Shown piece by piece: positions 4,147 through 63,699 of a stretch of 64,000 nucleotides of DNA (positions are counted from its first letter, which is position 1; each line of letters begins with the position of its first letter). Under the pieces are notes generated by a model that had not been told where the DNA came from, ran no database searches, and saw only the letters and a program-made list of their open reading frames with translations. A program made the translations under genes and the position numbers. The DNA lies in IMG/VR virus record IMGVR_UViG_3300046616_000314, positions 497,117 to 561,116 of that record. One strand, 5' to 3'.

Positions 4147-4214
4147 GGTAAAAACTCATAAAAAAATTACGAGAATTTAGTTACCGAATTTGGTTAAGGG
4201 ATGCAAGCGAAAAA

Positions 4215-4829: not shown

Positions 4830-5686
4830 TATGCGCTCTTAGGAAGATTGGGGTGATATGGTGTGCCGCCGGTCATAGTGTATCCAAGTGGAAGCCCTGA
4901 CATTTGTTGAGAACGTCGGTTCGCGAAATGAATCCAGCCGGGGCTACCTGAACCGCTATACTCCAAAAGAAATTGGGTATAGGGAATTTTGGCAGTCGTA
5001 ATGATCTTGACGGCGAGTTGACGAAGTTCTTCACGGCTAAGTCTGTTACCATTTTTGAACATATGTAGATCGCAAGCCGAACCAATGTTATGATCCGAAG
5101 TGCCAGTAGAATTTCTAAAGCCGCTACCAATCTTGAATTCGATCCCATCGGTGTTGTGTGACAACCAATCCTTAAGAGCATCGACGCTATTGGTAGCGAG
5201 AAATTTCAAATTACAAATAATGTCTGCTTTGTTGACACCATTGTTTCCGCCAGAGGGGATGGTATGGCGCAAAGCCGGTTGATAGACGCCAGACGAGAAA
5301 TCAGCGACCGTAAAATATTTTGAAATTTTTGTGGAATCTGGGGTGGATGAATTGTAGTCGCCGCATCCGACACCCTTGGATGTCCCGTTGACCGGAGTAA
5401 CGCCCGCCGCTCCTGGGTCTTCTGCGTTGCTTACTGAAGCCCGCTCCAAGCTATCAGCGGTACCGGGACCATATTTGTTATCGAGATACGCCCGGCGTTG
5501 ATCCGGTTCCATATCCTCGGTTTCCATACCGATAGATTCGTATTCGGCGACTTCAGCCGAAACACCGCTAGAGCCGACAACAGCCCCGCCGCCTTCGACA
5601 AAATGCGAAGACGCGCCAGTGATGACTTTTCCAAGTTTGCCTTGGACCATGACAACACTACCAACGTGGGCTACAGGATATGGCAT
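4829..5686 (-). CDS. PAAR-like N-terminus plus peptidase M15-type peptidoglycan hydrolase
   Basis: MPYPVAHVGS...ITGASSHFVEG resembles PAAR; SGFR...SDHNIGSACD...WIH are M15 Zn-ligand motifs; ATAAATA upstream (5731-5737). Confidence 0.65.
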   Translation of the reverse strand: MPYPVAHVGSVVMVQGKLGKVITGASSHFVEGGGAVVGSSGVSAEVAEYESIGMETEDMEPDQRRAYLDNKYGPGTADSLERASVSNAEDPGAAGVTPVNGTSKGVGCGDYNSSTPDSTKISKYFTVADFSSGVYQPALRHTIPSGGNNGVNKADIICNLKFLATNSVDALKDWLSHNTDGIEFKIGSGFRNSTGTSDHNIGSACDLHMFKNGNRLSREELRQLAVKIITTAKIPYTQFLLEYSGSGSPGWIHFANRRSQQMSGLPLGYTMTGGTPYHPNLPKSA

Positions 5687-6232: not shown

Positions 6233-9142
6233 ATGGCAACACTCGTAAGTCCCGGTGTAGACGTTCAAATTTATAATGAAAGCTTCTACGCAACCGCTGG
6301 TACTGGGACAGTTCCTTTGGTGGTATTCGCTAGTGCTGCGAATAAGCCAATTTCTGCTAGTGACTCTACTATCGCTCCATATTCTGTTCCTTCCCGCGCT
6401 GGCGAACTTTTCTTGGCTACTTCGCAACGCGAACTGATCCAACAATTCGGTACGCCTACCTTCAAGACCGTTCAGGGTACCCCTCTGCACGGCGACGAAC
6501 TGAACGAATATGGTCTTCTGGCTGCTTATCAATATCTGGGAATTTCGAACCGTTGCTACGTTGTTCGCGCTGATATCGATACGGCTCAACTGGAATCCAG
6601 CACTTCGGCTCCGGTCGGTGCTCCGCAAGCTGGTACATTCTGGTTTGACGTTGGTGAAACTTCGTTTGGTGTCTTCCAATCGAACGGCAATCCGAACGCT
6701 GGTGTTGCTTGGTTGACCCAACCGGTTCTGGTCGCGGGTTCGGCGAACACCACAAACGGCGAGCCTTCAACTGGCTTCGGCGCCGATGGCGACTTCGCTG
6801 TTGTCGTAAGTGTTTCGGATAACCTGCTTTATGAAAAGCTGGCTGGTGCTTGGTTCCTAGTTGGTTCGACCGCTTGGAAGGCAAACTATCCGACTAAGGT
6901 CCAAGGTTCGACCAACCCGGCTCCGATCCTGACCACCGATACCATCGTTATCACTGTTTATGACAGTGTTGGTGCTCCGACCGCAACAACCATTTCCTTC
7001 AGCGCGACCACTGGTACGCTTCCTGAAATTGTTACAGAAATCAACAACGCAGCTATTCCGAACGTTACGGCTTCGGTCACAACTGGTACGGCTCTGCTGA
7101 TCGCTGAAATCGCTGGTGGTAAGATCACGGTTCAAAATGGTGCTGGTACTCCGCTGGCAACTTTGGGCATCGTTCCGAATACCTATAATGGCGTTTCTCT
7201 GAAGCAAACAAGCAACGCTCAATATCCGGCTAATTCGGTCGCGGGCGACGTTTGGATCAAGGGTACGGTTCCTAACAAGGGTGCTGACTGGTCTGTTAAG
7301 TATTGGTCGTCGGCTGGTCAATGGATCGAAGTTGCGGCTCCGTTCTATCCTTACGACAGCATCGCCGCTGATGGCGACGCTGGTAAGGACGCTGCTGCCT
7401 TGCTCGCCTTCGGTGTTCCTACTGTTGGTACAATCTACGTTGGTTATGACGATGGCGTTGCTTCGGGCGGCACACCGGGTACTCAACAAATTCGTCGTTG
7501 GAATGGCACTATGTTCGAAAACCTCGTTTATGAGGCTTCGACTGTTCCTCCGACTTCGGCTCCTTCGGAAGGTACTCTGTGGTACAATTCTGATCTGCGC
7601 GTTGACATCATGTACGGCGATGGCACGACATGGATGGGCTACAAGCACAAGTTCCAAACAACTGACCCGAACGGCGTCATCATTTCGGGCTCTAAGCCTC
7701 TGGTCCAATCGACCGGTTCGGCTCTGGTCGATAATGACCTGTGGCTGGATTCGAGCGATCTGGAAAACTATCCGCTGCTGTATCGTTACTCGACCACAAC
7801 TGGTCGTTGGACACTGATCGACAACACTGACCAAACCTCGCCGTTTGGTGTCGTGTTCGCTGATGCACGTGCTGACTCGGGTCCGACCTATAGCGGTGCG
7901 CAATCTGGCTATGCATTTAACTCGGAACTGCCCGCCGATATGGTGAAGTCCGATTACCTGCTGCCGGATGCTCCCGATCCTCGCACATACCCAGACGGTA
8001 TGCTGCTGTTCAACACTCGCTATGGTACGTACAACGTTAAGCAATGGGAACCGAACTACTTCGCTCTCGGCGGCTACGACGCTAACACCGACTATACCGA
8101 AGAAACATATCGTATCGGAACCGCTGGTCCCGTCTTCCCGGCTCTGACTGATGCTGGTGTTTGGCTGACAGCAAGCGGCAATGGAACAAACGGTGCTCCG
8201 CTGATGGGTCGTAAGGCTCAACGTGCGATGATCGTTCGTGCCATGGGTGCCACAATCTCCGAAAACGAAAACCTGCGTTCAGACCTAGTTTATTACAACC
8301 TCATCGCCGCACCGGGCTACCCGGAAATGATCGATGAAATGGTTGTCCTGAATACCGATCAAAAGGAAGTGTCGTTCATCGTTGCCGATACGCCTGCGCG
8401 CCTGCGTCCGACCGGTACAGACATCACCGCGTGGGCAACCAATGCGAATGGTGCTTCGTCTAACGGCGAAGATGGTCTGACCACTTCTAGCGATTACGTT
8501 GGTGTCTATTACCCTTGGGGTCTGAGCACCGATCTGTCGGGTAACGAAGTTATGGTTCCGCCTTCTTCGGTTGCTCTCTGCACCATGGCTTATAACGACC
8601 AAGTTGCTTACCCGTGGTTCGCCCCGGCTGGCTTCACTCGTGGTCTGGTCCAGAATGCTACCACCGTTGGTTATCTGACTAGCGAAGGTGAATTCAAGCC
8701 TGTTCTGTTGAACCAAGGTCAAAAGGATGTTCTTTACACCAACAAGATCAACCCAATCGTGTTCATTCCGAACCGTGGCTTGGTTGTCAATGGTCAAAAG
8801 ACCCGTGCGCCGCTTGACAGCGCAATGGACCGCATCAACGTTGCTCGTCTGGTCAACTACCTGAAGTACCAACTGAGCAACATCACGCAACCGTTCTTGT
8901 TCGAACCGAACGATGAACAAACACGTGAATCGGCTCGCGTAACTGTCGAACGTTTCCTTGAAGGTCTCGTTGGTCTGCGCGCCCTGGAAGACTACGGCGT
9001 CCAGTGCGACTTGAACAACAACACCCCGGAACGTCGTGATCGTAATGAATTGTGGATCGATGTCGCTATCATCCCGACCAAGGCTGTCGAATTCATCTAC
9101 ATCCCGGTTCGTATTCTGAACAGCGGCGATTCTATCGCTTAA
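6233..9142 (+). CDS. tail sheath protein (large, with insertion domains)
   Basis: MATLVSPGVDV start; C-terminal YPWFAPAGFTRG, INPI, DRINVARL, FEPND, PTKAVEFIYIP; GGAG RBS. Confidence 0.96.
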   Translation: MATLVSPGVDVQIYNESFYATAGTGTVPLVVFASAANKPISASDSTIAPYSVPSRAGELFLATSQRELIQQFGTPTFKTVQGTPLHGDELNEYGLLAAYQYLGISNRCYVVRADIDTAQLESSTSAPVGAPQAGTFWFDVGETSFGVFQSNGNPNAGVAWLTQPVLVAGSANTTNGEPSTGFGADGDFAVVVSVSDNLLYEKLAGAWFLVGSTAWKANYPTKVQGSTNPAPILTTDTIVITVYDSVGAPTATTISFSATTGTLPEIVTEINNAAIPNVTASVTTGTALLIAEIAGGKITVQNGAGTPLATLGIVPNTYNGVSLKQTSNAQYPANSVAGDVWIKGTVPNKGADWSVKYWSSAGQWIEVAAPFYPYDSIAADGDAGKDAAALLAFGVPTVGTIYVGYDDGVASGGTPGTQQIRRWNGTMFENLVYEASTVPPTSAPSEGTLWYNSDLRVDIMYGDGTTWMGYKHKFQTTDPNGVIISGSKPLVQSTGSALVDNDLWLDSSDLENYPLLYRYSTTTGRWTLIDNTDQTSPFGVVFADARADSGPTYSGAQSGYAFNSELPADMVKSDYLLPDAPDPRTYPDGMLLFNTRYGTYNVKQWEPNYFALGGYDANTDYTEETYRIGTAGPVFPALTDAGVWLTASGNGTNGAPLMGRKAQRAMIVRAMGATISENENLRSDLVYYNLIAAPGYPEMIDEMVVLNTDQKEVSFIVADTPARLRPTGTDITAWATNANGASSNGEDGLTTSSDYVGVYYPWGLSTDLSGNEVMVPPSSVALCTMAYNDQVAYPWFAPAGFTRGLVQNATTVGYLTSEGEFKPVLLNQGQKDVLYTNKINPIVFIPNRGLVVNGQKTRAPLDSAMDRINVARLVNYLKYQLSNITQPFLFEPNDEQTRESARVTVERFLEGLVGLRALEDYGVQCDLNNNTPERRDRNELWIDVAIIPTKAVEFIYIPVRILNSGDSIA

Positions 9143-50948: not shown

Positions 50949-51245
50949 TCAAAGCCATTTGAATTTAAACAGAGCGTAGTCTTCTTCCGAACCAAACTCA
51001 AAGTCGATATAATAGGGAAGATGATACGAATATCCTGCAATAGATGGGCATTTGGACAAGTGTTTCTTGCACCAATCACGCACGTTACTGGTAAGACTCA
51101 AATAAAAAGACGGTGAATTACCCATGCGAGATTGATAAAGCAGATATGTGCGCTCTTGTTCAGTGTCCCAACGAAACGCCATGCTACGATCAAAGATCGT
51201 AACTTTGTCCTCACGCACAATCTTGACTTTGAACATCAGAACCAC
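50949..51245 (-). CDS. FKLKW-motif family protein
   Basis: FGSEEDYALFKFKWL. Confidence 0.75.
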   Translation of the reverse strand: MVLMFKVKIVREDKVTIFDRSMAFRWDTEQERTYLLYQSRMGNSPSFYLSLTSNVRDWCKKHLSKCPSIAGYSYHLPYYIDFEFGSEEDYALFKFKWL

Positions 51246-51514
51246 TTCAGCTTGAACAGAGCCATATCTTCTTCTTTCTCGAATAGGATATAGGCTGCTT
51301 CAAGTTCGGATGCTTTATCCATACCAGTACCAACCGCTCCAAAATATTGATATACAATATTTTGATCGCTAAGCCAATACTCGATCTCTTGATACATTTC
51401 CGTAGTCAAAACTTCTTCGGAGTAAACGCCGCCCAACAACTCGAAATGAGTCATTGCGTCGATCACCTTCCAACGTTGTTCATACGGAATGATGAGGCAG
51501 TTCGTTAAAGCCAT
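51236..51514 (-). CDS. FKLKW-motif family protein
   Basis: FEKEEDMALFKLKWF. Confidence 0.8.
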   Translation of the reverse strand: MALTNCLIIPYEQRWKVIDAMTHFELLGGVYSEEVLTTEMYQEIEYWLSDQNIVYQYFGAVGTGMDKASELEAAYILFEKEEDMALFKLKWF

Positions 51515-51825
51515 TTCAATTGGAACAGTACGAGATTTTCTACAGTGTCAAACTTGAGAAAATATAGCACGTCGGAATAGTAGCTGTCATACCTAAAATT
51601 GAAATCAAACTCATGCTTCCCGGCAACCTCAACCGCATCGTGCTTGAAGAAAGCATAGCCATTATGCATGGGAAGATTGTGAGCACACCATACCCGAATG
51701 TCGGGATGTAAGATGTAATCGTAAGTACCGCGCGCAGACCAACGATAAAGCAACAAGCATTTCGTTGGTAATGCTAAGCAAGTCGGGTCCGTAAAAGGTT
51801 CGCTGGGGATCGGTAACACCGTCAA
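51505..51825 (-). CDS. FKLKW-motif family protein
   Basis: FDTVENLVLFQLKWL. Confidence 0.75.
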   Translation of the reverse strand: MTVLPIPSEPFTDPTCLALPTKCLLLYRWSARGTYDYILHPDIRVWCAHNLPMHNGYAFFKHDAVEVAGKHEFDFNFRYDSYYSDVLYFLKFDTVENLVLFQLKWL

Positions 51826-51853
51826 CCCAGAAAGATAGCGTCCATAATATTAC

Positions 51854-52168
51854 TTATACTTGGGCGCCAGCCCATCTAAGCATGAACAGCATCTTTTCGT
51901 CTACAGTTCTAAAAATAATATACGCCCCATGTTCAAAGCCGCCTGCTGGATAAACGAATATCCCATCAACGTCGTGATCGTAACACCATTGCAACGCCGT
52001 GGGGTGCAGCCGATGGTAAGAATGGAACGGACTGAAACCGTAATACGGAAACTCAAAAAAATTTTCAGAAGGAAAAGTGGGACTATCAGTCACCGCCCAG
52101 GTCGTAGTGGTAATACCAACACCACCGCGACATTGGATTCCCAACTCGGATACATCATCAAACGTCAT
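51854..52168 (-). CDS. FKLKW-motif family protein
   Basis: FRTVDEKMLFMLRW. Confidence 0.75.
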   Translation of the reverse strand: MTFDDVSELGIQCRGGVGITTTTWAVTDSPTFPSENFFEFPYYGFSPFHSYHRLHPTALQWCYDHDVDGIFVYPAGGFEHGAYIIFRTVDEKMLFMLRWAGAQV

Positions 52169-52389
52169 CCGAACTTCAACCGAAACAATGCTGCGTCGTG
52201 TTCATCAATGAACCTAAAGGTAAGGTCTACACGCTTGGTGTTCTCGTTGATTTCAACATCCGAGCATAGCCAATCATTGACCATCATATTGTTTGTGTTA
52301 CACCAATTCTTGCACTTGGTAATTGCTTCCACATAGTTCTCGTATGTTATCAAGTGAACGCAATGAGGATATTTCCAACTCGTAGTCAT
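52165..52389 (-). CDS. FKLKW-motif family protein
   Basis: FIDEHDAALFRLKFG. Confidence 0.8.
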   Translation of the reverse strand: MTTSWKYPHCVHLITYENYVEAITKCKNWCNTNNMMVNDWLCSDVEINENTKRVDLTFRFIDEHDAALFRLKFG

Positions 52390-52640
52390 CCGAATCTCAA
52401 CTTGAATGCGATAACGTCTTCTTCAAATCGGAAGTAATAGACCACTTTCCCTTCCAACAATCGCGCCGCCAAAACATACGCAGGAAGCCCCTCGGCATCC
52501 TTGCACGTTTTTCGTAGCCAATCTTCAGCCAGACCGATGGCTTGAAAACTTTCAAATTGATGGGTCAACCGATGCGGATATTTCGCAAAGTTATGAAGCG
52601 GTAAACCATTTATATCGCGCCGCCGAATAGGATGTATCAT
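52386..52640 (-). CDS. FKLKW-motif family protein
   Basis: FRFEEDVIAFKLRFG. Confidence 0.8.
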   Translation of the reverse strand: MIHPIRRRDINGLPLHNFAKYPHRLTHQFESFQAIGLAEDWLRKTCKDAEGLPAYVLAARLLEGKVVYYFRFEEDVIAFKLRFG

Positions 52641-52894
52641 CCGAATTTCACCTTGAACATCATGGCGTCTTCTTCGCTCTCAAACATATACGTTGTCGTT
52701 GCCGAAAAATCACCGTCTCGCTTTTTATAGTCCGTATGATACTTCCAACGAGACGTGCAGTTGTCTCGCAACCAACTATATAACATTTGAAACGTTGCGC
52801 GATTGCTCACAAATTGCTGCATCGAATCATAAGTGAATGCAACTATAACGTTCGGGATTGTATCAGAGTGCGGATCGCGCGCCATCAGACCCAC
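52637..52894 (-). CDS. FKLKW-motif family protein
   Basis: FESEEDAMMFKVKFG. Confidence 0.8.
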   Translation of the reverse strand: MGLMARDPHSDTIPNVIVAFTYDSMQQFVSNRATFQMLYSWLRDNCTSRWKYHTDYKKRDGDFSATTTYMFESEEDAMMFKVKFG

Positions 52895-53118
52895 TTCAAT
52901 GCAAACATGATTGCATCTTCCTCGCTCTCAAAAAGGAACTGTATTAGTAAGTCGGGACCATCGTCATACCATTTCCACATAGTATCGTAATTCCACCGAT
53001 CTATGCAGTTTTTCTGAAGCCAAATCCGCATCTGTTCCAAATCAATTTCATCATCCATTTCGATGACGATTTTCGGATCAGTGTCTTTATGAGGACCGAG
53101 CCCGATCACGATAGCCAC
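52885..53118 (-). CDS. FKLKW-motif family protein
   Basis: FESEEDAIMFALKWV. Confidence 0.8.
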   Translation of the reverse strand: MAIVIGLGPHKDTDPKIVIEMDDEIDLEQMRIWLQKNCIDRWNYDTMWKWYDDGPDLLIQFLFESEEDAIMFALKWV

Positions 53119-53438
53119 TTCATCTTGAACAACAAAGCATCATCGTCGCGTTGAACACTCAACATGAAATGAGACGCCTTCGGATCATAATCCGGGTCAT
53201 CACCGCGCATCATCCGCATGATGATTTTGAACTTAGCCTTCGGATGCGTAGATGACATGATCCACGCATACACTTCCGGCTTGAAAGTGACGTAATCATT
53301 GTTACGTCCGCGCTTACAACTAAATTTTTGGGGATGACTGACAGAGGTCAGAATATCAGGCAACATGATGTCCCGAAATCGTTGTCGATCCGGTTCACGA
53401 GGCTTTGGAAGCCTAATAAGAGTTGCCTGTTGACGCAT
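53106..53438 (-). CDS. FKLKW-motif family protein
   Basis: DDDALLFKMKWLS. Confidence 0.8.
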   Translation of the reverse strand: MRQQATLIRLPKPREPDRQRFRDIMLPDILTSVSHPQKFSCKRGRNNDYVTFKPEVYAWIMSSTHPKAKFKIIMRMMRGDDPDYDPKASHFMLSVQRDDDALLFKMKWLS

Positions 53439-54276: not shown

Positions 54277-54564
54277 TCACCAAGCCAAAAGCTGGTCACT
54301 CCCGAAACTCAGAACAAACATGAAGGCATCATCAACCAAATCAAAGTAATAGATGATGTCATATTTACCGCCCCAAACATATTGGCAATAAACTTCATGT
54401 TGCGGGCAATGCTTTTTAATCCATTGGACACGTTTCGGATGGTTGTGAACGTGATCTTTGATGCCACACTTAATGGCAACCAAATAAATTTCATCGCCAT
54501 TGGGCAGAGTGGTTTTCTCGATCTCCATCAGAACCATTCCGATTTCAAAAGCTTCCGGTCCCAC
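54277..54564 (-). CDS. FKLKW-motif family protein
   Basis: FDLVDDAFMFVLSFG. Confidence 0.7.
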   Translation of the reverse strand: MGPEAFEIGMVLMEIEKTTLPNGDEIYLVAIKCGIKDHVHNHPKRVQWIKKHCPQHEVYCQYVWGGKYDIIYYFDLVDDAFMFVLSFGSDQLLAW

Positions 54565-55476: not shown

Positions 55477-55773
55477 TCAAGCCCATTTTATCTTGTAGAG
55501 GAAGGCGTCTTCTTCATTTTTGAAGAGGAAATAGTATTTGTACTTCCCGGTCTTACGATAGTCGTAAACGAGGAAGTAATCGTATCTACTGATGTTTTTG
55601 AATAGCCAATCGTTAAGCGGCGATGGATAAACCAGTTCGCCATATTGTCTGCCAGGATTGAACTTGATTATGTTTTTAAGCTGGAAAGGGATGGTGTATC
55701 CCACGGTAAGTTTGACATCACCGAAGGCATGACACGTGTCGTACAAAAGGTCGGTGACGGTATGCACGGGCAT
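55477..55773 (-). CDS. FKLKW-motif family protein
   Basis: FKNEEDAFLYKIKWA. Confidence 0.75.
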   Translation of the reverse strand: MPVHTVTDLLYDTCHAFGDVKLTVGYTIPFQLKNIIKFNPGRQYGELVYPSPLNDWLFKNISRYDYFLVYDYRKTGKYKYYFLFKNEEDAFLYKIKWA

Positions 55774-55826
55774 TAATGGTCTTTCCAGGCTAAATAACAG
55801 CATAACATTGTTCGGAAACTATTGCT

Positions 55827-56081: not shown

Positions 56082-56157
56082 TGGAGGATGATCTCGGATT
56101 CGAACCGAGGACCCGCAGGTTAAGGGCCTGCCGCTCTGACCACTGAGCTAATCATCC
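56082..56157 (-). tRNA. tRNA-Lys(CUU), C at position 33
   Basis: GCAGG-CC CTT AA-CCTGC; CCA. Confidence 0.85.
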
Positions 56158-56258
56158 TCAAGCCTTTGAAAAGGCTGAAGTTTCTGCATCGGAAGGATCA
56201 CTGCTTGCAAATTCCCGAATGCTTGAGGGGCGGACCTACGGGTGCCGCCCTTCTTTTT

Positions 56259-56345
56259 TGGTGCGGTCAGAGAGGTTCGAACTCTCACGGGATTTCTCCC
56301 ACAACGCCCTCAACGTTGCGCGTATACCGGTTCCGCCATGACCGC
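56259..56345 (-). tRNA. tRNA-Leu(GAG)
   Basis: CAACG-TT GAG GG-CGTTG; long variable arm; CCA. Confidence 0.93.
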
Positions 56346-56363
56346 ATGAACCGTTTTAAATTT

Positions 56364-56450
56364 TGGTGCGACTAGAGGGATTCGAACCCCCACGCCCTTT
56401 CGGGCACTGCCATCTGAGGGCAGCGCGTCTACCAATTCCGCCATAGTCGC
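56364..56450 (-). tRNA. tRNA-Leu(CAG)
   Basis: CTGCC-CT CAG AT-GGCAG; long variable arm; CCA. Confidence 0.93.
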
Positions 56451-56463
56451 CCTTTCGGCTTAG

Positions 56464-56536
56464 CAGGCGCGGCAGGATTTGAACCCGCGACCGTTGGTTT
56501 TGGAGACCAATGCTCTACCATCTGAGCTACACGCCT
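56464..56536 (-). tRNA. tRNA-Trp(CCA), no encoded CCA end
   Basis: TTGGT-CT CCA AA-ACCAA. Confidence 0.93.
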
Positions 56537-56555
56537 GCAAAACCGAAAGAATAGT

Positions 56556-56632
56556 TGGCGCGAGTTGTAGGATTCGAACCCACGACCCCTGCGTCCGAAG
56601 CGCAGTGCTCTAATCCGCTGAGCTAAACTCGC
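56556..56632 (-). tRNA. tRNA-Arg(UCG)
   Basis: CTGCG-CT TCG GA-CGCAG; CCA. Confidence 0.93.
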
Positions 56633-56645
56633 AAAATGTACTTTG

Positions 56646-56719
56646 CAGGGATGACGGGATTCGAACCCATGACCTTTGCCTTCGCAGGGCAACGCTCTAA
56701 TCCGCTGAGCTACACCCCT
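56646..56719 (-). tRNA. tRNA-Arg(GCG), no encoded CCA end
   Basis: TTGCC-CT GCG AA-GGCAA. Confidence 0.9.
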
Positions 56720-56837
56720 GCAAAATACATTCATAGTTGCCCCCGGTACCGGATTGCACCGGGGGCTTTGTTAAGAGACCTAAACCGTTGGTAGAACGGC
56801 GTAGATCGGATTCACGATGTAAAAGTTGTAGAATAGA

Positions 56838-56877
56838 CAAAGAAAAACCCCGGAGACATTTCTGTCGCCGGGGTTCC
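56838..56877 (-). terminator. attenuator terminator upstream of the Arg/Trp/Leu/Lys tRNA operon
   Basis: AACCCCGG-C-GACA-GAAA-TGTC-T-CCGGGGTT-TTTCTTT. Confidence 0.85.
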
Positions 56878-56904
56878 AATGTGCCAGTAGAGAATTCCTA
56901 TCCG

Positions 56905-56997
56905 TTAGATAGGCATACCCTCACGCACACGGCTCCCCGCGCGTCGAAGCCACTTACGGCGACGCAGCAATTTGGAGAGGGTGGACGACAAGGACAT
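56905..56997 (-). CDS. putative attenuator leader peptide MSLSSTLSKLLRRRKWLRRAGSRVREGMPI (30 aa)
   Basis: Lies between promoter and terminator; codon run matches downstream anticodons. Confidence 0.75.
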   Translation of the reverse strand: MSLSSTLSKLLRRRKWLRRAGSRVREGMPI

Positions 56998-57052
56998 AAT
57001 TTTCTCAGTTTCCTACAGGTGTGATTGTGCCACGAATGGCGTGTTTCGAATA

Positions 57053-57086
57053 CTATTTATCGCAGAACGATAGCCCATGGTCAATA
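57053..57086 (-). promoter_or_regulatory. promoter TATTGAC-N18-GATAAATAG of the leader/tRNA operon
   Basis: Same motif and spacing as 61728-61761. Confidence 0.65.
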
Positions 57087-57128
57087 AAAAAATTCGCTTT
57101 CGTCAACTTTTTTATAACCCATTGATTT

Positions 57129-57479
57129 CTAACCAAATTTTATCTTACATAGGGCATAATCGTATTGCCAAATGTCGTAGTCTCCTTCAAACCAAACGCC
57201 TTTTTCTGAGACATCATCCCAACTGAATGCGGACCCCACGGTTTCGACTCTCCAATCGGTCGTGAAGAGGATATGATTCTTGACTTCCGTGGGACCTAGA
57301 AAATCGTCTCGGACTTTCCGTGGTATAAAAGTACGATGATATGCGTATTGTTTGGTTTCAACCGGACCTTCCCACACGCCCAAGAAGGAACCGGAGCGAT
57401 ATTTTACATCGTTGCTGGACATGGCTAATTGCATGTGTTCGACCATACGCTTAGCGTCGTCGGTATCTACTAATCTCAT
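57129..57479 (-). CDS. FKLKW-motif family protein
   Basis: YDYALCKIKFG. Confidence 0.65.
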   Translation of the reverse strand: MRLVDTDDAKRMVEHMQLAMSSNDVKYRSGSFLGVWEGPVETKQYAYHRTFIPRKVRDDFLGPTEVKNHILFTTDWRVETVGSAFSWDDVSEKGVWFEGDYDIWQYDYALCKIKFG

Positions 57480-61727: not shown

Positions 61728-61761
61728 TATTGACGCTCACTCGTCGTTATGAGATAAATAG
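61728..61761 (+). promoter_or_regulatory. promoter TATTGAC-N18-GATAAATAG of the leader/tRNA operon
   Basis: Same motif and spacing as 57053-57086. Confidence 0.65.
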
Positions 61762-61817
61762 AAATACGAACTGCCACTGAGGCGGCTCGCAACCCATTTT
61801 TGGAGACCACCAGTTCA

Positions 61818-61943
61818 ATGACTCGTTCGTTCCACATTGTTGCAGATATCACCAGCGCGGGCATTCCAGCCGCCGCTGTGATGATCCGTGACTTTGCGAA
61901 CCAACCCGTCAATCAACCGGGTCTCGGAGGCATGTACGTGTAA
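61818..61943 (+). CDS. putative attenuator leader peptide MTRSFHIVADITSAGIPAAAVMIRDFANQPVNQPGLGGMYV (41 aa)
   Basis: GGAG RBS; followed by a terminator; codons match downstream anticodons. Confidence 0.7.
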   Translation: MTRSFHIVADITSAGIPAAAVMIRDFANQPVNQPGLGGMYV

Positions 61944-61970
61944 ACTGAATATCATCAGTTTTAGGGTACC

Positions 61971-62005
61971 GAGCCTCCTGAACGTAAAGTTCTGGGGGCT
62001 TTTTT
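61971..62005 (+). terminator. attenuator terminator upstream of tRNA-Ile
   Basis: GAGCCTCC-T-GAAC-GTAAA-GTTC-T-GGGGGCTT-TTTT. Confidence 0.85.
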
Positions 62006-62025
62006 AATGCCCGAAATCCTGATGG

Positions 62026-62101
62026 GGTCCTTTAGCTCAGTTGGTAGAGCATCGTCTTGATAAGGCGAGGGTCGCTGGTTCAAGTCCAGCAGGGACTACC
62101 A
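62026..62101 (+). tRNA. tRNA-Ile(GAU)
   Basis: TCGTC-TT GAT AA-GGCGA; CCA. Confidence 0.93.
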
Positions 62102-62141
62102 AATTTTTAACTCTAACCGGAAGCCTTATCAACTTCCAAGT

Positions 62142-62216
62142 GGTGCTGTAGCTCAGTGGGAGAGCATCGGGTTGTCAGTCCGAGGGTCGCGGGTTCAATC
62201 CCCGTCAGCACCGCCA
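62142..62216 (+). tRNA. tRNA-Asp(GUC)
   Basis: TCGGG-TT GTC AG-TCCGA; GCCA. Confidence 0.93.
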
Positions 62217-62629
62217 CTTTCGCAGAGGAAGAAATTCCAATGCAAAATTTTCTGATTTGCCTCCCCGGCTGTTTCGATGACCGGGGAGGCAGGTAAGGAA
62301 ATGGTCTTTGACATAACACTCATACTTTTTGAGTGCCTGAATATTATCAGATGGGAACAGTGCCGTTCCTGTGCATGGGAATCATTTCGTGCTTAGCAGT
62401 CTGATATGGGAAGAAATACAGTCACCAAGCCCTGTAGGCTTGTTCTGACTGTTGGCAACTCCACCCGCCTACGGGCGTTTCGGGCACTTTAATAGTATGA
62501 GCGTTGTGTCGGTCTTTGACATTGTTGAAAAAACAAACAGTACACCCCGCCGTGGCGACGATGATCGCGGCGGGGTGACAGGAAAGTTGCGCCAAGTATC
62601 AACCGTGGTACTTCGCATAACTTTTCTGT

Positions 62630-62703
62630 TGGGGAATGGTGTAATGGTAACACGCTGGGCTTTGGTCTCAGAATTCTAGGTTCGAGTCCTAGTTCCCCAA
62701 CCA
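62630..62703 (+). tRNA. tRNA-Gln(UUG)
   Basis: CTGGG-CT TTG GT-CTCAG; CCA. Confidence 0.92.
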
Positions 62704-62747
62704 TTTAAGTTATTACTATTGCTTGAAGGAAACTTCAAGCTCAAAGT

Positions 62748-62826
62748 CGCGGGAAGGACAAGATAGTTAGTCACCAGCCTCATAAGCTGGAATATCTGGT
62801 AGATGCGAGCACTACTCCCGCTCCCA
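62748..62826 (+). tRNA. atypical tRNA-Met(CAU), initiator-like acceptor
   Basis: CGCGGGA/TCCCGCT (C1 mismatch); CCAGC-CT CAT AA-GCTGG; irregular D and T arms. Confidence 0.65.
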
Positions 62827-62830
62827 ACTC

Positions 62831-62998
62831 GGCACGGTGATGAACCGGTAAGTCCAAGCGAATGAAGGTCCGACATAGCGGTTGTTGGAGCAAGGTCCCT
62901 CCCTCAAAGAGGGGCGCCTAGAAATTGGTCCCCTGGAACCCGTGACAATCCAGGGGCGAAAGTCTCTCCATTGGCGGCTGGTTGGAGAGAGCCCGGTA
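62831..62998 (+). ncRNA. candidate structured RNA (TAAGTCC family)
   Basis: GGCACGGTGATGAACCGGTAAGTCCAA then hairpins TCCGACA/TGTTGGA, CCCTC/GAGGG, CCCCTGGA/TCCAGGGG, TCTCTCCA/TGGAGAGA. Confidence 0.55.
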
Positions 62999-63002
62999 TT
63001 GT

Positions 63003-63079
63003 CGGAATATGGCGCAGCTTGGTAGCGCATTTCGCTGGGGGCGAAAGGGTCGCAGGTTCAAATCCTGCTATTCCGACCA
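63003..63079 (+). tRNA. tRNA-Pro(GGG)
   Basis: TTTCG-CT GGG GG-CGAAA; CCA. Confidence 0.93.
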
Positions 63080-63142
63080 ACTTTTTACTTGACGTTACTG
63101 AATAGAATGATACTATACAGTCATTCATTTGGAGATTGTTTC

Positions 63143-63316
63143 ATGGACATCAACGACGACATTATCATCTTCGGTGAAGGTAAGGACGTTGTTGTCCTGA
63201 AGAAAGCCGAATGGGACAAAATCAAGGAAATCATCGCCCGGTATCCCGAAGCGGAAGCCGAACTGAAGGCGGCTAATCTGGAAATCCTGCCCATCGAAAT
63301 CGGGCGGACGCGCTAA
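63143..63316 (+). CDS. hypothetical small protein
   Basis: TTGACG-16-TACTAT promoter; GGAG RBS. Confidence 0.65.
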   Translation: MDINDDIIIFGEGKDVVVLKKAEWDKIKEIIARYPEAEAELKAANLEILPIEIGRTR

Positions 63317-63475
63317 CGAAATTTTACGGCTGTTGGATTTGCGTGTAACAGGTTCGAACCCTGACCATAAGCTCTTACGAGCATATGAGTAAGCCTACGC
63401 AAAATACTTTATTGACAGTACCGCGTCAATAAAGTATAAATATAATTACAAGTTCAGAGGCGAAATGCCCTCTGT

Positions 63476-63550
63476 TCCGTGGTAGCTCAGCGGTAGAGTA
63501 GGTGGCTGTTAACCACTTGGTCGTAGGTTCGAATCCTACCCACGGAGCCA
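63476..63550 (+). tRNA. tRNA-Asn(GUU)
   Basis: GTGG-CT GTT AA-CCAC; GCCA. Confidence 0.95.
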
Positions 63551-63552
63551 GT

Positions 63553-63597
63553 TAAAGCCAGCTAGTCCGCCTAAAGGTGGAGACTAGCTGGCTTTTT
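63553..63597 (+). terminator. intrinsic terminator after tRNA-Asn
   Basis: AAAGCCAGCTAGTC...GACTAGCTGGCTTTTT. Confidence 0.75.
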
Positions 63598-63622
63598 CAT
63601 TCCAAAATTTTATCACATTTGT

Positions 63623-63699
63623 CGGGGTGTAGCGCAGTCTGGTAGCGCGCTCGTTTCGGTAACGAGAGGTCGGAAGTTCGATTCTTCCTACCCCGACCA
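63623..63699 (+). tRNA. tRNA-Pro(CGG), U at position 37
   Basis: CTCGT-TT CGG TA-ACGAG; CCA. Confidence 0.9.

What the first reader, a model, noticed from the sequence alone, without database searches (positions are those of the whole stretch)
56082..57086. Leader-peptide attenuator whose codons match the anticodons of the downstream phage tRNA operon
Seen, minus strand in order: promoter (57086-57053), unannotated 30-codon ORF (56997-56905), intrinsic terminator (56877-56838), then six tRNAs: Arg(GCG), Arg(UCG), Trp(CCA), Leu(CAG), Leu(GAG), Lys(CUU). The leader has nine consecutive codons CTG CGT CGC CGT AAG TGG CTT CGA CGC. Each is read by one of those six tRNAs, and all six are represented, including the rare CGA. 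The two preceding codons, AAA and TTG, match phage tRNA-Lys(UUU) and Leu(CAA) further along the same strand. The fold is a classical attenuator. The control codons form a hairpin (GCGTCG/CGACGC), and CTCTCC can pair with GGGGAG. The leader segment CGGGGAGCCGTGTGC can instead pair (about 13 bp) with GCACATTGGAACCCCG, which includes the terminator's 5' arm. A CCTATC/GATAGG hairpin flanks the stop. Established: trp/his/pheST-type attenuation couples ribosome stalling to read-through, and hosts can cleave tRNAs as an anti-phage defence. Inference: the phage senses shortage of particular tRNAs and then transcribes the replacements. I know of no described leader-peptide attenuator controlling tRNA genes in this way.
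Basis: partly seen in the sequence, partly recalled or inferred. Interest (0 to 1): 0.95.

Follow-up and report, generated by a model that had tools for sequence, protein, structure and literature searches.

The report
Leader-peptide attenuators controlling phage tRNA operons
A giant phage places a tiny gene and a transcription stop signal in front of a block of its tRNA genes. The tiny gene is written in the codons those tRNAs read, so the phage probably makes these tRNAs only when they run short. The same design, with codons that change to match the tRNAs, recurs in at least eight other uncultured phages, and I found no published description of it.

Summary
It includes a promoter, a 30-codon ORF, an intrinsic terminator and six tRNAs. 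Nine consecutive leader codons are each read by one of the six tRNAs, and a terminator/antiterminator/anti-antiterminator topology is present.

Taken alone, the window's codon run is only moderately significant, because another 9-codon run occurs off-frame in the sheath gene. I found 15 promoter–short ORF–terminator–tRNA units in 9 uncultured phages (two are in this window), falling into five codon/tRNA types:
- Arg/Leu/Lys/Trp
- Ile/Val/Gln/Pro/Asn
- Ser/His/Tyr
- Leu/Gln
- Met/Gly/Glu/Asn/Pro/Lys/Thr/Gln

In each unit the leader is enriched for codons of its own downstream tRNAs (Fisher p = 4.5e-11, excluding the original unit). Nearly every tRNA is sampled. In the nine units measured and in unit I, the stop codon lies 27–34 nt before the terminator. 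In the 13 units folded, the last codons form an unusually stable hairpin with the terminator's 5' arm.

Best reading: ribosome-mediated attenuation that gives demand-driven, self-limiting expression of phage tRNAs. The mechanism class is known, but the target, the product feedback and the multi-tRNA sensing appear undescribed. There are no expression data and the host is unknown.

The parts
57055..57084 (-). Sigma-70-type promoter: -35 TTGACC, 14-nt spacer, then extended -10 TGCGATAAAT. An A/T-rich tract lies upstream.
   Evidence: The pattern TTGAC-N18-KATAAAT occurs 3 times in the window against 0.03 expected, each time before a tRNA unit. The same promoter heads units in other phages.
56998..57048 (-). 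5' UTR (transcription start inferred at about 57048). It has a 5' UUCG hairpin at 57040-57029 and SD-like AGGAAA (57014-57009) and GAGA (57006-57003).
   Evidence: SD-like motifs lie 5-15 nt before the ATG in the homologous units, read from the sequences. The start site is not mapped.
56905..56997 (-). Leader ORF: 30 codons plus TAA.
   Evidence: Homologous ORFs are in L091:4019-4105, L105:1354-1268, L214:2891-2799 and L301.
56941..56967 (-). Nine control codons (L R R R K W L R R). Each is read by one of the six downstream tRNAs. They contain the GCGTCG/CGACGC hairpin.
   Evidence: 12 of 29 leader codons are cognate against 4.1 expected.
56974..56979 (-). Segment 1 (CUCUCC), which pairs with GGGGAG of segment 2. 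This is the anti-antiterminator.
   Evidence: Full-length minimum-free-energy structures.
56925..56939 (-). Segment 2: the 5' arm of the antiterminator (CGGGGAGCCGUGUGC), inside codons 20-25.
   Evidence: hairpin -35.3 kcal/mol, z = -3.95 against shuffles.
56897..56913 (-). Hairpin CCUAUC/GAUAGG with the UAA stop codon in its loop. It is the apical part of the antiterminator.
   Evidence: An equivalent stop-codon hairpin with a different sequence is present in the other units.
56869..56884 (-). Segment 3: the 3' arm of the antiterminator. It overlaps the first 5 nt of the terminator's 5' arm.
56838..56873 (-). Intrinsic terminator: a 26-nt hairpin with a GAAA loop, followed by UUUUUCUUUG.
   Evidence: The stop codon lies 31 nt before it. 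The range is 27-34 nt across the nine units.
56720..56837 (-). Spacer between the terminator and the first tRNA. It holds the conserved motif ACATCGTGAATC (56820-56809) and two hairpins.
   Evidence: Function unknown; it could be a processing signal or an internal promoter.
56082..56719 (-). Regulated genes: tRNA-Arg(GCG), Arg(UCG), Trp(CCA), Leu(CAG), Leu(GAG), Lys(CUU).
61730..62005 (+). Second unit of the same kind, on the other strand:
- promoter TTGACG...TGAGATAAAT (61730-61759);
- SD GGAGA (61802-61806);
- 41-codon ORF (61818-61943);
- antiterminator arm GGAGGC (61926-61931);
- terminator 61973-61999 plus T6.
   Evidence: Homologous leaders are in L091, L105, L303 and L301.
62026..63699 (+). 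tRNAs downstream of the second unit: Ile(GAU), Asp(GUC), Gln(UUG), Pro(GGG), Asn(GUU), Pro(CGG). An internal promoter lies before Asn.

Best explanation
This is a ribosome-mediated (leader-peptide) transcription attenuator placed in front of a phage tRNA operon.

Proposed mechanism:
1. A strong host-type promoter starts a transcript that first encodes a 30-codon peptide.
2. If every tRNA needed for the control codons is available, the ribosome runs to the stop codon. In doing so it occupies the 5' arm of the antiterminator, so the terminator forms about 30 nt further on. Transcription ends before the tRNA genes.
3. If any of the sensed tRNAs is scarce (or uncharged), the ribosome stalls on the control codons. 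This melts the upstream helix (segment 1:2) and leaves segment 2 free to pair with the terminator's 5' arm. RNA polymerase then reads through and makes exactly the tRNAs that were missing.
4. Those tRNAs relieve the stall, which gives negative feedback.

Status of each part:
- Shown: the sequence elements, their conservation, the codon/anticodon correspondence and its co-variation, and the alternative helices.
- Inferred: translation of the ORF, the direction of the switch, and the physiological trigger. The trigger could be rare-codon demand, host tRNA decay during infection, or anticodon-nuclease defence.
For: (1) Elements and correspondence in the window.

(2) Replication. The shared promoter motif retrieved other phage contigs. 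Every hit with a gap of at least 240 nt before a same-strand tRNA cluster carries a short ATG ORF plus terminator, and the ORF's codons match that cluster:
- Ser/His: SSSSHCSSSHS before Ser(CGA), His, Ser(UGA), Ser(GCU), Ser(GGA).
- Leu/Gln: CTA CTC CAG CAA CTG CAA CTT before Gln(CUG), Leu(GAG), Leu(CAG), Leu(UAG), Gln(UUG).
- Arg/Leu/Lys/Trp homologues.
- Ile/Val/Gln/Phe/Met/Pro/Asn homologues.
- A fifth type (QKHNQQTEKGNPTM before Met, Gly, Glu, Asn, Pro, Lys, Thr, Gln) was found by a promoter-independent scan.

(3) Statistics:
- The cross-match matrix is block-diagonal. The ORF frame has the most cognate codons in 9 of 9 units.
- Fisher-combined p = 4.5e-11 for four independent types, excluding the unit that prompted the finding.
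- Distinct tRNAs covered by at least one codon: 6/6, 9/10, 5/5, 5/5, 4/4, 6/6, 8/8, 6/7, 8/9, 5/5.

(4) Geometry. The stop codon lies 27-34 nt before the terminator stem in the nine units measured and 32 nt in unit I. By my hand count from the, 62 coordinates, the last control codons lie about 8-15 nt before the antiterminator arm.

(5) Switch:
- In 13 of 13 units folded, the terminator's 5' arm pairs with the last codons of the ORF when the 3' arm is absent.
- These hairpins are far more stable than shuffles (z from -1.8 to -7.2; 0-2 of 200 shuffles do as well).
- In full-length folds the terminator forms and segment 2 pairs upstream.

(6) Selection is on RNA and codons, not on the protein:
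- My comparison of the two sequences printed (L091 against L301) shows two compensatory changes in the antiterminator helix (G-C to A-U, U-A to C-G). These change the peptide from CV to YA.
- Synonymous to nonsynonymous ratios are only 35:52 and 12:14.
- The indel visible in the DNA alignment is a whole codon, and the other length differences among the homologous ORFs are whole codons.

(7) In the Ile-type units only 26-27 nt separate the U-tract from the first tRNA. That tRNA can therefore be reached only through the terminator.
Against: - There are no transcript, ribosome-profiling or reporter data. The host is unknown, and there is no cultured relative.
- SD-to-ATG spacing is long (11-15 nt) in the Arg/Leu and Ile types. 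One unit looks leaderless.
- At equilibrium the terminator wins for every simulated ribosome position in the window's leader, so antitermination must be kinetic.
- A ribosome stalled on the last two or three control codons would probably cover the CGGGG arm.
- The correspondence is not perfect. Ser codons at the N-terminus of Arg/Leu leaders and Ala/Thr/Gly codons in Ile-type leaders have no partner in the cluster. His, Cys and Trp tRNAs are unsampled in some units.
- The window's second leader is not significantly enriched on its own (12 of 40 against 9.9 expected).
- A conserved motif after the terminator could be an internal promoter, which would make control partial.
- Units within a type are homologous, so only about five cases are independent.
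- The control set of unrelated tRNA clusters is small (16).
Confidence: 0.78

Rival explanations
1. The promoter, ORF and terminator form an independent small transcript, either a small RNA or a micro-protein gene. The tRNAs would then be expressed from another start site, or only after a phage-encoded processive antiterminator acts (temporal control). The terminator would not be controlled by translation.
For: - The terminators are strong (-11 to -23 kcal/mol with U5-7).
- The leaders are very structured (z -3.8 to -5.8).
- In two units an 80-95-aa ORF lies between the terminator and the tRNAs.
- A conserved motif, ACATYGTGAATC, follows the Arg/Leu-type terminators and recurs inside tRNA clusters.
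- Other tRNA units have promoters with no leader.
Against: - It does not explain why leader codons track the downstream tRNAs across five types.
- It does not explain why the ORF's last codons always pair with the terminator's 5' arm, or why the stop-to-terminator distance is fixed.
- In Ile-type units there is no room for a promoter between the U-tract and the tRNA (26-27 nt).
- No sigma-70-like promoter was found in the window's spacer.
Confidence: 0.09
2. The leader is a non-translated RNA that senses tRNAs directly. It would work by codon-anticodon pairing, as a T-box riboswitch does with its specifier codon, and the ORF would be incidental.
For: - The secondary structure is strong and conserved.
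- Shine-Dalgarno geometry is weak or distant in several units.
- Codons complementary to the anticodons are exactly what a direct-pairing sensor would also need.
Against: - No T-box or any other Rfam family matches, even at E up to 10.
- The cognate triplets are in one frame that begins at an ATG and ends at a stop at a fixed distance from the terminator. The other five frames carry fewer.
- Length differences among homologous ORFs are whole codons.
- Runs of 7-11 adjacent codons for up to nine different tRNAs have no precedent in T-boxes, which read one tRNA.
- Part of the control run is base-paired in a hairpin, so those triplets are poorly placed for pairing with tRNA in trans.
Confidence: 0.06
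3. The short ORFs encode functional micro-proteins, for example basic or hydrophobic peptides. Their amino-acid composition would happen to resemble the neighbouring tRNA set, perhaps because both reflect phage codon demand.
For: - Peptides are recognisably conserved within a type.
- Gene callers predict the Ile-type ORFs.
Against: - Protein-level constraint is weak.
- Compensatory RNA changes alter the peptide (my comparison of the sequences printed).
- Composition changes completely between types, in step with the tRNAs.
- Isoacceptor-level matching cannot be a protein-level property. All four Ser anticodon classes are sampled by TCG, TCC, TCA and AGT. Five Leu/Gln anticodons are sampled by seven codons.
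Confidence: 0.04
4. Coincidence: an Arg-rich reading of a CG-rich hairpin happens to lie upstream of Arg, Leu, Lys and Trp tRNAs.
For: - Another 9-codon run of the same set occurs off-frame in the sheath gene, with two 8-runs elsewhere.
- The GCGTCG/CGACGC palindrome by itself favours CGN codons.
Against: Independent replication in four further codon/tRNA types and eight further phages.
Confidence: 0.01

Closest known systems
Leader-peptide attenuators of amino-acid biosynthetic operons (trpL, hisL, leuL, thrL, pheL, ilvL/ivbL of enterobacteria)
   Same: - A promoter-proximal short ORF with a cluster of regulatory codons.
- An intrinsic terminator before the structural genes.
- Mutually exclusive 1:2, 2:3 and 3:4 helices.
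- Stalling is predicted to favour the 2:3 antiterminator.
- ilv and thr leaders are also multivalent, sensing several amino acids.
   Different: - The regulated genes are tRNAs, not enzymes. The sensed molecule is therefore (part of) the product itself, not an amino acid.
- Codons are chosen per isoacceptor, sampling nearly every anticodon in the operon, rather than being a run of one codon.
- The stop codon sits in the apical hairpin of the antiterminator, so the whole 5' arm is coding.
- The elements are phage-borne and come in at least five interchangeable specificities behind one promoter type.
pheST attenuator (pheM leader) of E. coli
   Same: Leader-peptide attenuation that controls a component of the translation apparatus in response to the supply of a charged tRNA.
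   Different: It controls a synthetase (a protein), uses a single amino acid (Phe), and is chromosomal. It gives no direct product feedback on the tRNA pool.
T-box riboswitches
   Same: A transcription terminator/antiterminator switch that reads the state of a specific tRNA and controls translation-related genes.
   Different: - A T-box binds one uncharged tRNA directly through a specifier codon and the T-box bulge, without ribosomes.
- No T-box model matches here.
- The element here has an ORF with start, stop and frame-specific codon enrichment.
Phage processive antitermination (lambda N/nut, Q/qut, HK022 put)
   Same: A phage early promoter followed by a terminator that must be overcome to express downstream genes.
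   Different: Those systems modify RNA polymerase through a protein or an RNA element and are blind to codons. Nothing here resembles nut or put, and the codon/tRNA match is unexplained by them.
Phage tRNAs as counter-defence or compensation (T5 and T4 tRNAs against PrrC, PARIS and retron effectors; tRNA replacement during host shut-off)
   Same: This supplies the physiological rationale: phage tRNAs replace host tRNAs that are cleaved or decay (for example PMC11555353, listed).
   Different: To my knowledge those studies describe what the tRNAs do, not a cis-acting sensor that switches their transcription on according to need.

Membership tests
Ribosome-mediated (leader-peptide) transcription attenuator | Short ORF with a start codon and ribosome-binding site, directly downstream of the promoter | tested here: met
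   ATG ORFs of 19-45 codons are present in all 15 units. SD-like AGGA, GGAG or AAGG lies 5-15 nt upstream. The spacing is long in two types and one unit is apparently leaderless, so initiation strength is uncertain.
Ribosome-mediated (leader-peptide) transcription attenuator | Cluster of regulatory codons specific to the thing being sensed | tested here: met
   Nine of nine consecutive cognate codons in the window. 10 of 11, 7 of 7, 10 of 11 and 13 of 18 in other types. Enrichment is frame-specific and set-specific. Combined p = 4.5e-11.
Ribosome-mediated (leader-peptide) transcription attenuator | Intrinsic terminator between the leader ORF and the structural genes | tested here: met
   A hairpin plus U5-7 is present in every unit, -11 to -23 kcal/mol.
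Ribosome-mediated (leader-peptide) transcription attenuator | Antiterminator helix (2:3) that competes for the terminator's 5' arm, with its own 5' arm reachable by the translating ribosome | tested here: met
   Met in 13 of 13 units folded. z is -1.8 to -7.2 against shuffles. The consensus fold of five Ile-type leaders recovers it. The two compensatory changes between L091 and L301 are my reading of the sequences.
Ribosome-mediated (leader-peptide) transcription attenuator | Upstream helix (1:2) that sequesters segment 2 when the leader is not being translated | tested here: inconclusive
   It is present in the window's full-length minimum-free-energy fold (CUCUCC:GGGGAG), and the terminator forms in 8 of 9 full-length folds. 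However, on truncated transcripts without a ribosome, 2:3 already forms in the window's leader. The partner of segment 2 also differs between types.
Ribosome-mediated (leader-peptide) transcription attenuator | Read-through depends on leader translation and rises when the cognate charged tRNA is scarce | not testable with these tools
   This needs reporter fusions or coupled in-vitro transcription-translation. The host is unknown.
T-box riboswitch | Stem I with specifier loop, conserved T-box sequence in the antiterminator bulge, and a match to the Rfam T-box model | tested here: not met
   No Rfam family other than tRNA reaches its gathering score in the window. No T-box hit appears at E up to 10 in 56700-57150.
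Processive antitermination site (nut, put, qut) | A recognisable boxA/boxB or put-like element, together with a phage antiterminator protein | not tested
   No RNA-family hit. I did not search for antiterminator proteins.

The most novel reading that the evidence does not exclude
Large uncultured phages carry a modular 'tRNA homeostat'. Each tRNA operon is preceded by its own multi-input leader peptide, which polls nearly every isoacceptor encoded downstream (OR logic). A block of tRNAs is therefore transcribed only when one of them becomes limiting. The cause could be rare-codon demand, host tRNA decay, or cleavage by anticodon-nuclease defences. Transcription shuts off again once supply is restored. 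Leaders evolve by codon turnover that follows gain and loss of tRNA genes.
Probability: 0.6. Interest if true: 0.95.

Novelty: new variant of a known kind. Interest (0 to 1): 0.9.

Why it matters
If it works as inferred, this is the first case I know of in which tRNA genes are controlled by leader-peptide attenuation. It would also be the first direct feedback from tRNA availability to tRNA transcription.

- It would explain how tRNA-rich giant phages avoid making dozens of tRNAs constitutively.
- It would give phages a built-in sensor for tRNA-targeting host defences.
- It would provide natural, compact, swappable sensors for individual tRNA isoacceptors. These could serve as reporters of tRNA supply or as parts for synthetic biology.
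- It makes an open question directly testable, namely what phage tRNAs are for and when they are needed. The leaders state, codon by codon, which shortages each phage has been selected to detect.

Tried and rejected
- Close relatives through neighbouring proteins. The 116-aa upstream gene, the 272-aa gene and the 423-aa gene found only the source contig in IMG/VR and in 5.8 billion proteins.
- Degenerate back-translation of the window's leader peptide in IMG/VR: self only.
- INPHARED phage records: only tRNA-level matches for the window, and none for the L005 or L303 leaders. There is no cultured model.
- Rfam at gathering and at permissive thresholds: nothing but tRNAs.
- GTDB genomes scanned with the promoter pattern: 58 hits, none followed by a tRNA unit. 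I found no evidence that a host uses the design.
- Post-terminator motif T5AATGCCCRAAATCC: it also follows an ordinary gene terminator in L010, so it is not leader-specific.
- Pfam on the small ORFs between terminator and tRNAs, and on the neighbours: no family.
- Multiple alignment of the five Arg/Leu-type antiterminator regions was too divergent to give a consensus fold. I used per-sequence folds instead.
- Equilibrium folding with a simulated ribosome did not switch the window's leader to the antiterminated state. Only the co-transcriptional (truncated) folds do.
Full report
**1. Where we are**

The window is the last 64 kb of IMGVR_UViG_3300046616_000314, a 561,116-bp contig of an uncultured myovirus-like phage (sheath and large terminase). 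It carries 16 tRNA genes. No cultured relative exists in the phage collection. The genes flanking the finding have no homologue in 5.8 billion proteins.

**2.

- Promoter: TTGACC, a 14-nt spacer, then TGCGATAAAT (57084-57055).
- 5' UTR: about 50 nt, with a UUCG hairpin.
- ORF: 30 codons (56997-56905).
- Terminator: a GAAA-loop hairpin with a U-tract (56873-56838).
- Spacer: 118 nt.
- tRNAs: six (56719-56082).

Codons 11-19 are all read by the six tRNAs, and all six tRNAs are used.

Taken alone, the run is less extraordinary than 0.144^9 suggests. The window contains another 9-run of the same codon set, off-frame in the sheath gene, and two 8-runs. My estimate of a realistic local p, scaling those runs to the length of the leader, is about 0.002-0.01.

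**3. A second unit in the same window**

Upstream of the plus-strand cluster Ile-Asp-Gln-Pro-Asn-Pro there is the same promoter (TTGACG...TGAGATAAAT). A 41-codon ORF (61818-61943) and a terminator follow, with the terminator ending 20 nt before tRNA-Ile. Its overall enrichment is not significant (12 of 40 cognate against 9.9 expected), although N-Q-P-V-N-Q-P sits near its end. The promoter type TTGAC-N18-KATAAAT occurs three times in the window against 0.03 expected, always before tRNAs.

**4. The decisive step: relatives found through the promoter**

Scanning public collections for the shared promoter motif returned mostly chance hits. Every hit followed by a same-strand tRNA cluster at 240 nt or more had a short ORF and a terminator in between. 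In each case the ORF's codons matched that cluster.

| Unit | Leader | Downstream tRNAs |
|---|---|---|
| L005/L008 | TCG TCG TCC TCG CAT tgt TCG TCA AGT CAT TCG | Ser(CGA), His, Ser(UGA), Ser(GCU), Ser(GGA), His |
| L129 (a 608-kb phage) | CTA CTC CAG CAA CTG CAA CTT | Gln(CUG), Leu(GAG), Leu(CAG), Leu(UAG), Gln(UUG) |
| L097 | rich in Ser, Tyr, His | Ser(GCU), Ser(GGA), Tyr, His |
| L091, L105/L037, L214, L301 | homologues of the window's Arg/Leu leader | Arg, Leu, Lys, Trp tRNAs |
| L091, L105, L303, L301/L302 | homologues of the window's second leader | Ile, Val, Gln, Phe, Met, Pro, Asn (Cys) |
| L206 | MQKHNQQTEKGNPTMFGGG, 13 of 18 cognate | Met, Gly, Glu, Asn, Pro, Lys, Thr, Gln, Trp |
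| L214, plus strand | 45-codon ORF | Pro, Pro, Gly, Cys, Gly, Ile, Met, Met |

The last two units came from a promoter-independent scan of every tRNA cluster in all fetched DNA. The scan looked for an ATG ORF ending 20-40 nt before a terminator. It recovered the family members and added those two.

The total is 15 units, 9 phages and 5 codon/tRNA types. One promoter hit (L024) and three units in the window abut tRNAs with no leader, so leaders are not universal.

**5. Statistics**
- Using phage codon usage and standard wobble rules, each leader is enriched for its own type's set (1.2- to 5.2-fold) and mostly depleted for the others.
- The ORF frame has more cognate codons than any of the other five frames in 9 of 9 units.
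- Fisher-combined p is 4.5e-11. This leaves out the unit that prompted the finding and takes one unit per type.
- Nearly every distinct tRNA is sampled at least once: 6/6, 9/10, 5/5, 5/5, 4/4, 6/6, 8/8, 6/7, 8/9, 5/5 (combined p = 3e-4).
- Within types the codons follow gene content. TAT occurs three times only where tRNA-Tyr is present. TCG occurs five times only with tRNA-Ser(CGA). GAT and GAC occur only with tRNA-Asp.

**6. Architecture**
- The stop codon lies 27-34 nt before the terminator stem in the nine units measured and 32 nt in unit I.
- With the upstream part masked and the terminator's 3' arm not yet made, the terminator's 5' arm pairs with the last 4-11 codons of the ORF in 13 of 13 units folded. 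This forms a long hairpin (-19 to -35 kcal/mol) that carries the stop codon in or next to its apical hairpin.
- These hairpins beat dinucleotide shuffles (z from -1.8 to -7.2).
- In full-length folds the terminator forms, and the G-rich arm pairs further upstream.
- For the window's leader, ribosomes placed at codons 11-16 leave the antiterminator intact on the nascent transcript. At codons 17-19 they cover its first bases. At equilibrium the terminator always wins, as it does for trp (my knowledge), so the switch must be kinetic.
- My comparison of the L091 and L301 sequences printed shows two double substitutions that keep the antiterminator helix but change the peptide. Protein-level constraint is weak, and length differences among homologous ORFs are whole codons.
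- From my own knowledge of expressome structures, a spacing of about 30 nt is close to the minimum distance between a ribosome's A site and the polymerase active site. A ribosome reaching the stop codon would then sit just behind a polymerase that is entering the terminator.

**7. Mechanism and rivals**

The best reading is classical ribosome-mediated attenuation applied to tRNA genes. Shortage of any sampled tRNA stalls the ribosome and frees the antiterminator, so the missing tRNAs are transcribed; supply then restores termination.

I considered five rivals:
- an independent small transcript with a constitutive terminator;
- temporal control by a phage antiterminator protein;
- a T-box-like direct sensor;
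- a functional micro-protein;
- chance.

None explains the frame-specific, isoacceptor-level co-variation together with the fixed geometry. In the Ile-type units there is also no room for another promoter (26-27 nt).

Open caveats:
- there are no expression data;
- the host is unknown;
- SD spacing is long in two types;
- some codons and some tRNAs are unmatched;
- a conserved motif after the terminator has unknown function;
- only about five cases are evolutionarily independent;
- the negative-control set is small.

**8. Novelty**

Eight full-text searches found no description of leader-peptide attenuation of tRNA genes, in phages or elsewhere. One apparent hit was checked and was unrelated. 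The library is incomplete, so priority cannot be proven. The mechanism class is textbook. The new features are the target, the product feedback, the multi-isoacceptor sensing and the modular family behind one promoter. I rate it a new variant of a known kind, with high interest.

Noticed in passing
window 61730-62005 (+): A second promoter, 41-codon ORF and terminator unit lies directly before tRNA-Ile, Asp, Gln and Pro. It is homologous to leaders in four other phages. It lies outside the coordinates of the finding.
   Followed up: yes
window 56809-56820 (-); L091:1212-1223 and 4177-4188; L105:1178-1189; L214:2703-2714; L301:1661-1672 and 4925-4936: The conserved motif ACATYGTGAATC (often preceded by TTG or TTT) follows the Arg/Leu-type terminators and recurs between tRNAs inside Ile-type clusters. 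It could be an internal promoter, a protein-binding site or a processing signal.
   Followed up: partly
window 62000-62025; L005:5883-5901; L010:750-768 (-): The sequence T5-6 AATGCCC(A/G)AAATCC follows terminators in three different phage contigs, once after an ordinary protein gene. It is a shared post-terminator element of unknown function.
   Followed up: partly
window about 50949-53438, 54277-54564 and 55477-55803 (-): About eleven tandem small genes (74-110 aa) are interleaved with the tRNA units. All end in a similar C-terminal motif (acidic residues, then F/Y-x-L/V-K/R-W/F). This is a paralogous expansion with no family match.
   Followed up: no
window 62217-63002 (+) and about 63330-63375: Spacers of about 400 and 300 nt between tRNA-Asp, Gln and Pro contain several long GC-rich hairpins. 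A fragment resembling the 3' end of a tRNA (GGTTCGAACCCTGACCA) lies before the tRNA-Asn promoter.
   Followed up: no
window 63144-63316 (+): A small ORF with its own promoter and a good SD, inside the tRNA cluster, begins M-D-I-N-D-D-I-I-I. This is an 8-codon run of Ile, Asp and Asn codons matching tRNAs of that cluster, but no terminator follows it.
   Followed up: partly
window 6772-6798 (+): A second run of nine Arg/Leu/Lys/Trp-set codons lies off-frame inside the tail-sheath gene. It shows that such runs arise without function.
   Followed up: yes
L005:6624-7139 (+): An ORF with an HNH-type motif (inferred from reading the sequence, not from a family search) sits between tRNA-Ser(GCU) and tRNA-Ser(GGA) inside the regulated cluster. 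It may be a homing endonuclease.
   Followed up: no
L304:5923-7149 (= L305:6197-7423): A seryl-tRNA synthetase gene (PF02403, PF00587) follows the Ile-type tRNA cluster about 74 nt after the last tRNA. It may belong to the same attenuated operon.
   Followed up: no
L214:690-767 (-): ARAGORN calls a tRNA with anticodon UCA (reported as SeC) downstream of the Arg/Leu cluster. It is a possible opal-suppressor tRNA.
   Followed up: no
L138 (-), about 7056 in reverse-complement coordinates (Pyrinomonadaceae MAG): A chance promoter-pattern hit in a bacterial genome is followed by a 17-codon Ile/Asn-rich ORF and a terminator-like hairpin. It may be an ordinary bacterial Ile attenuator.
   Followed up: no
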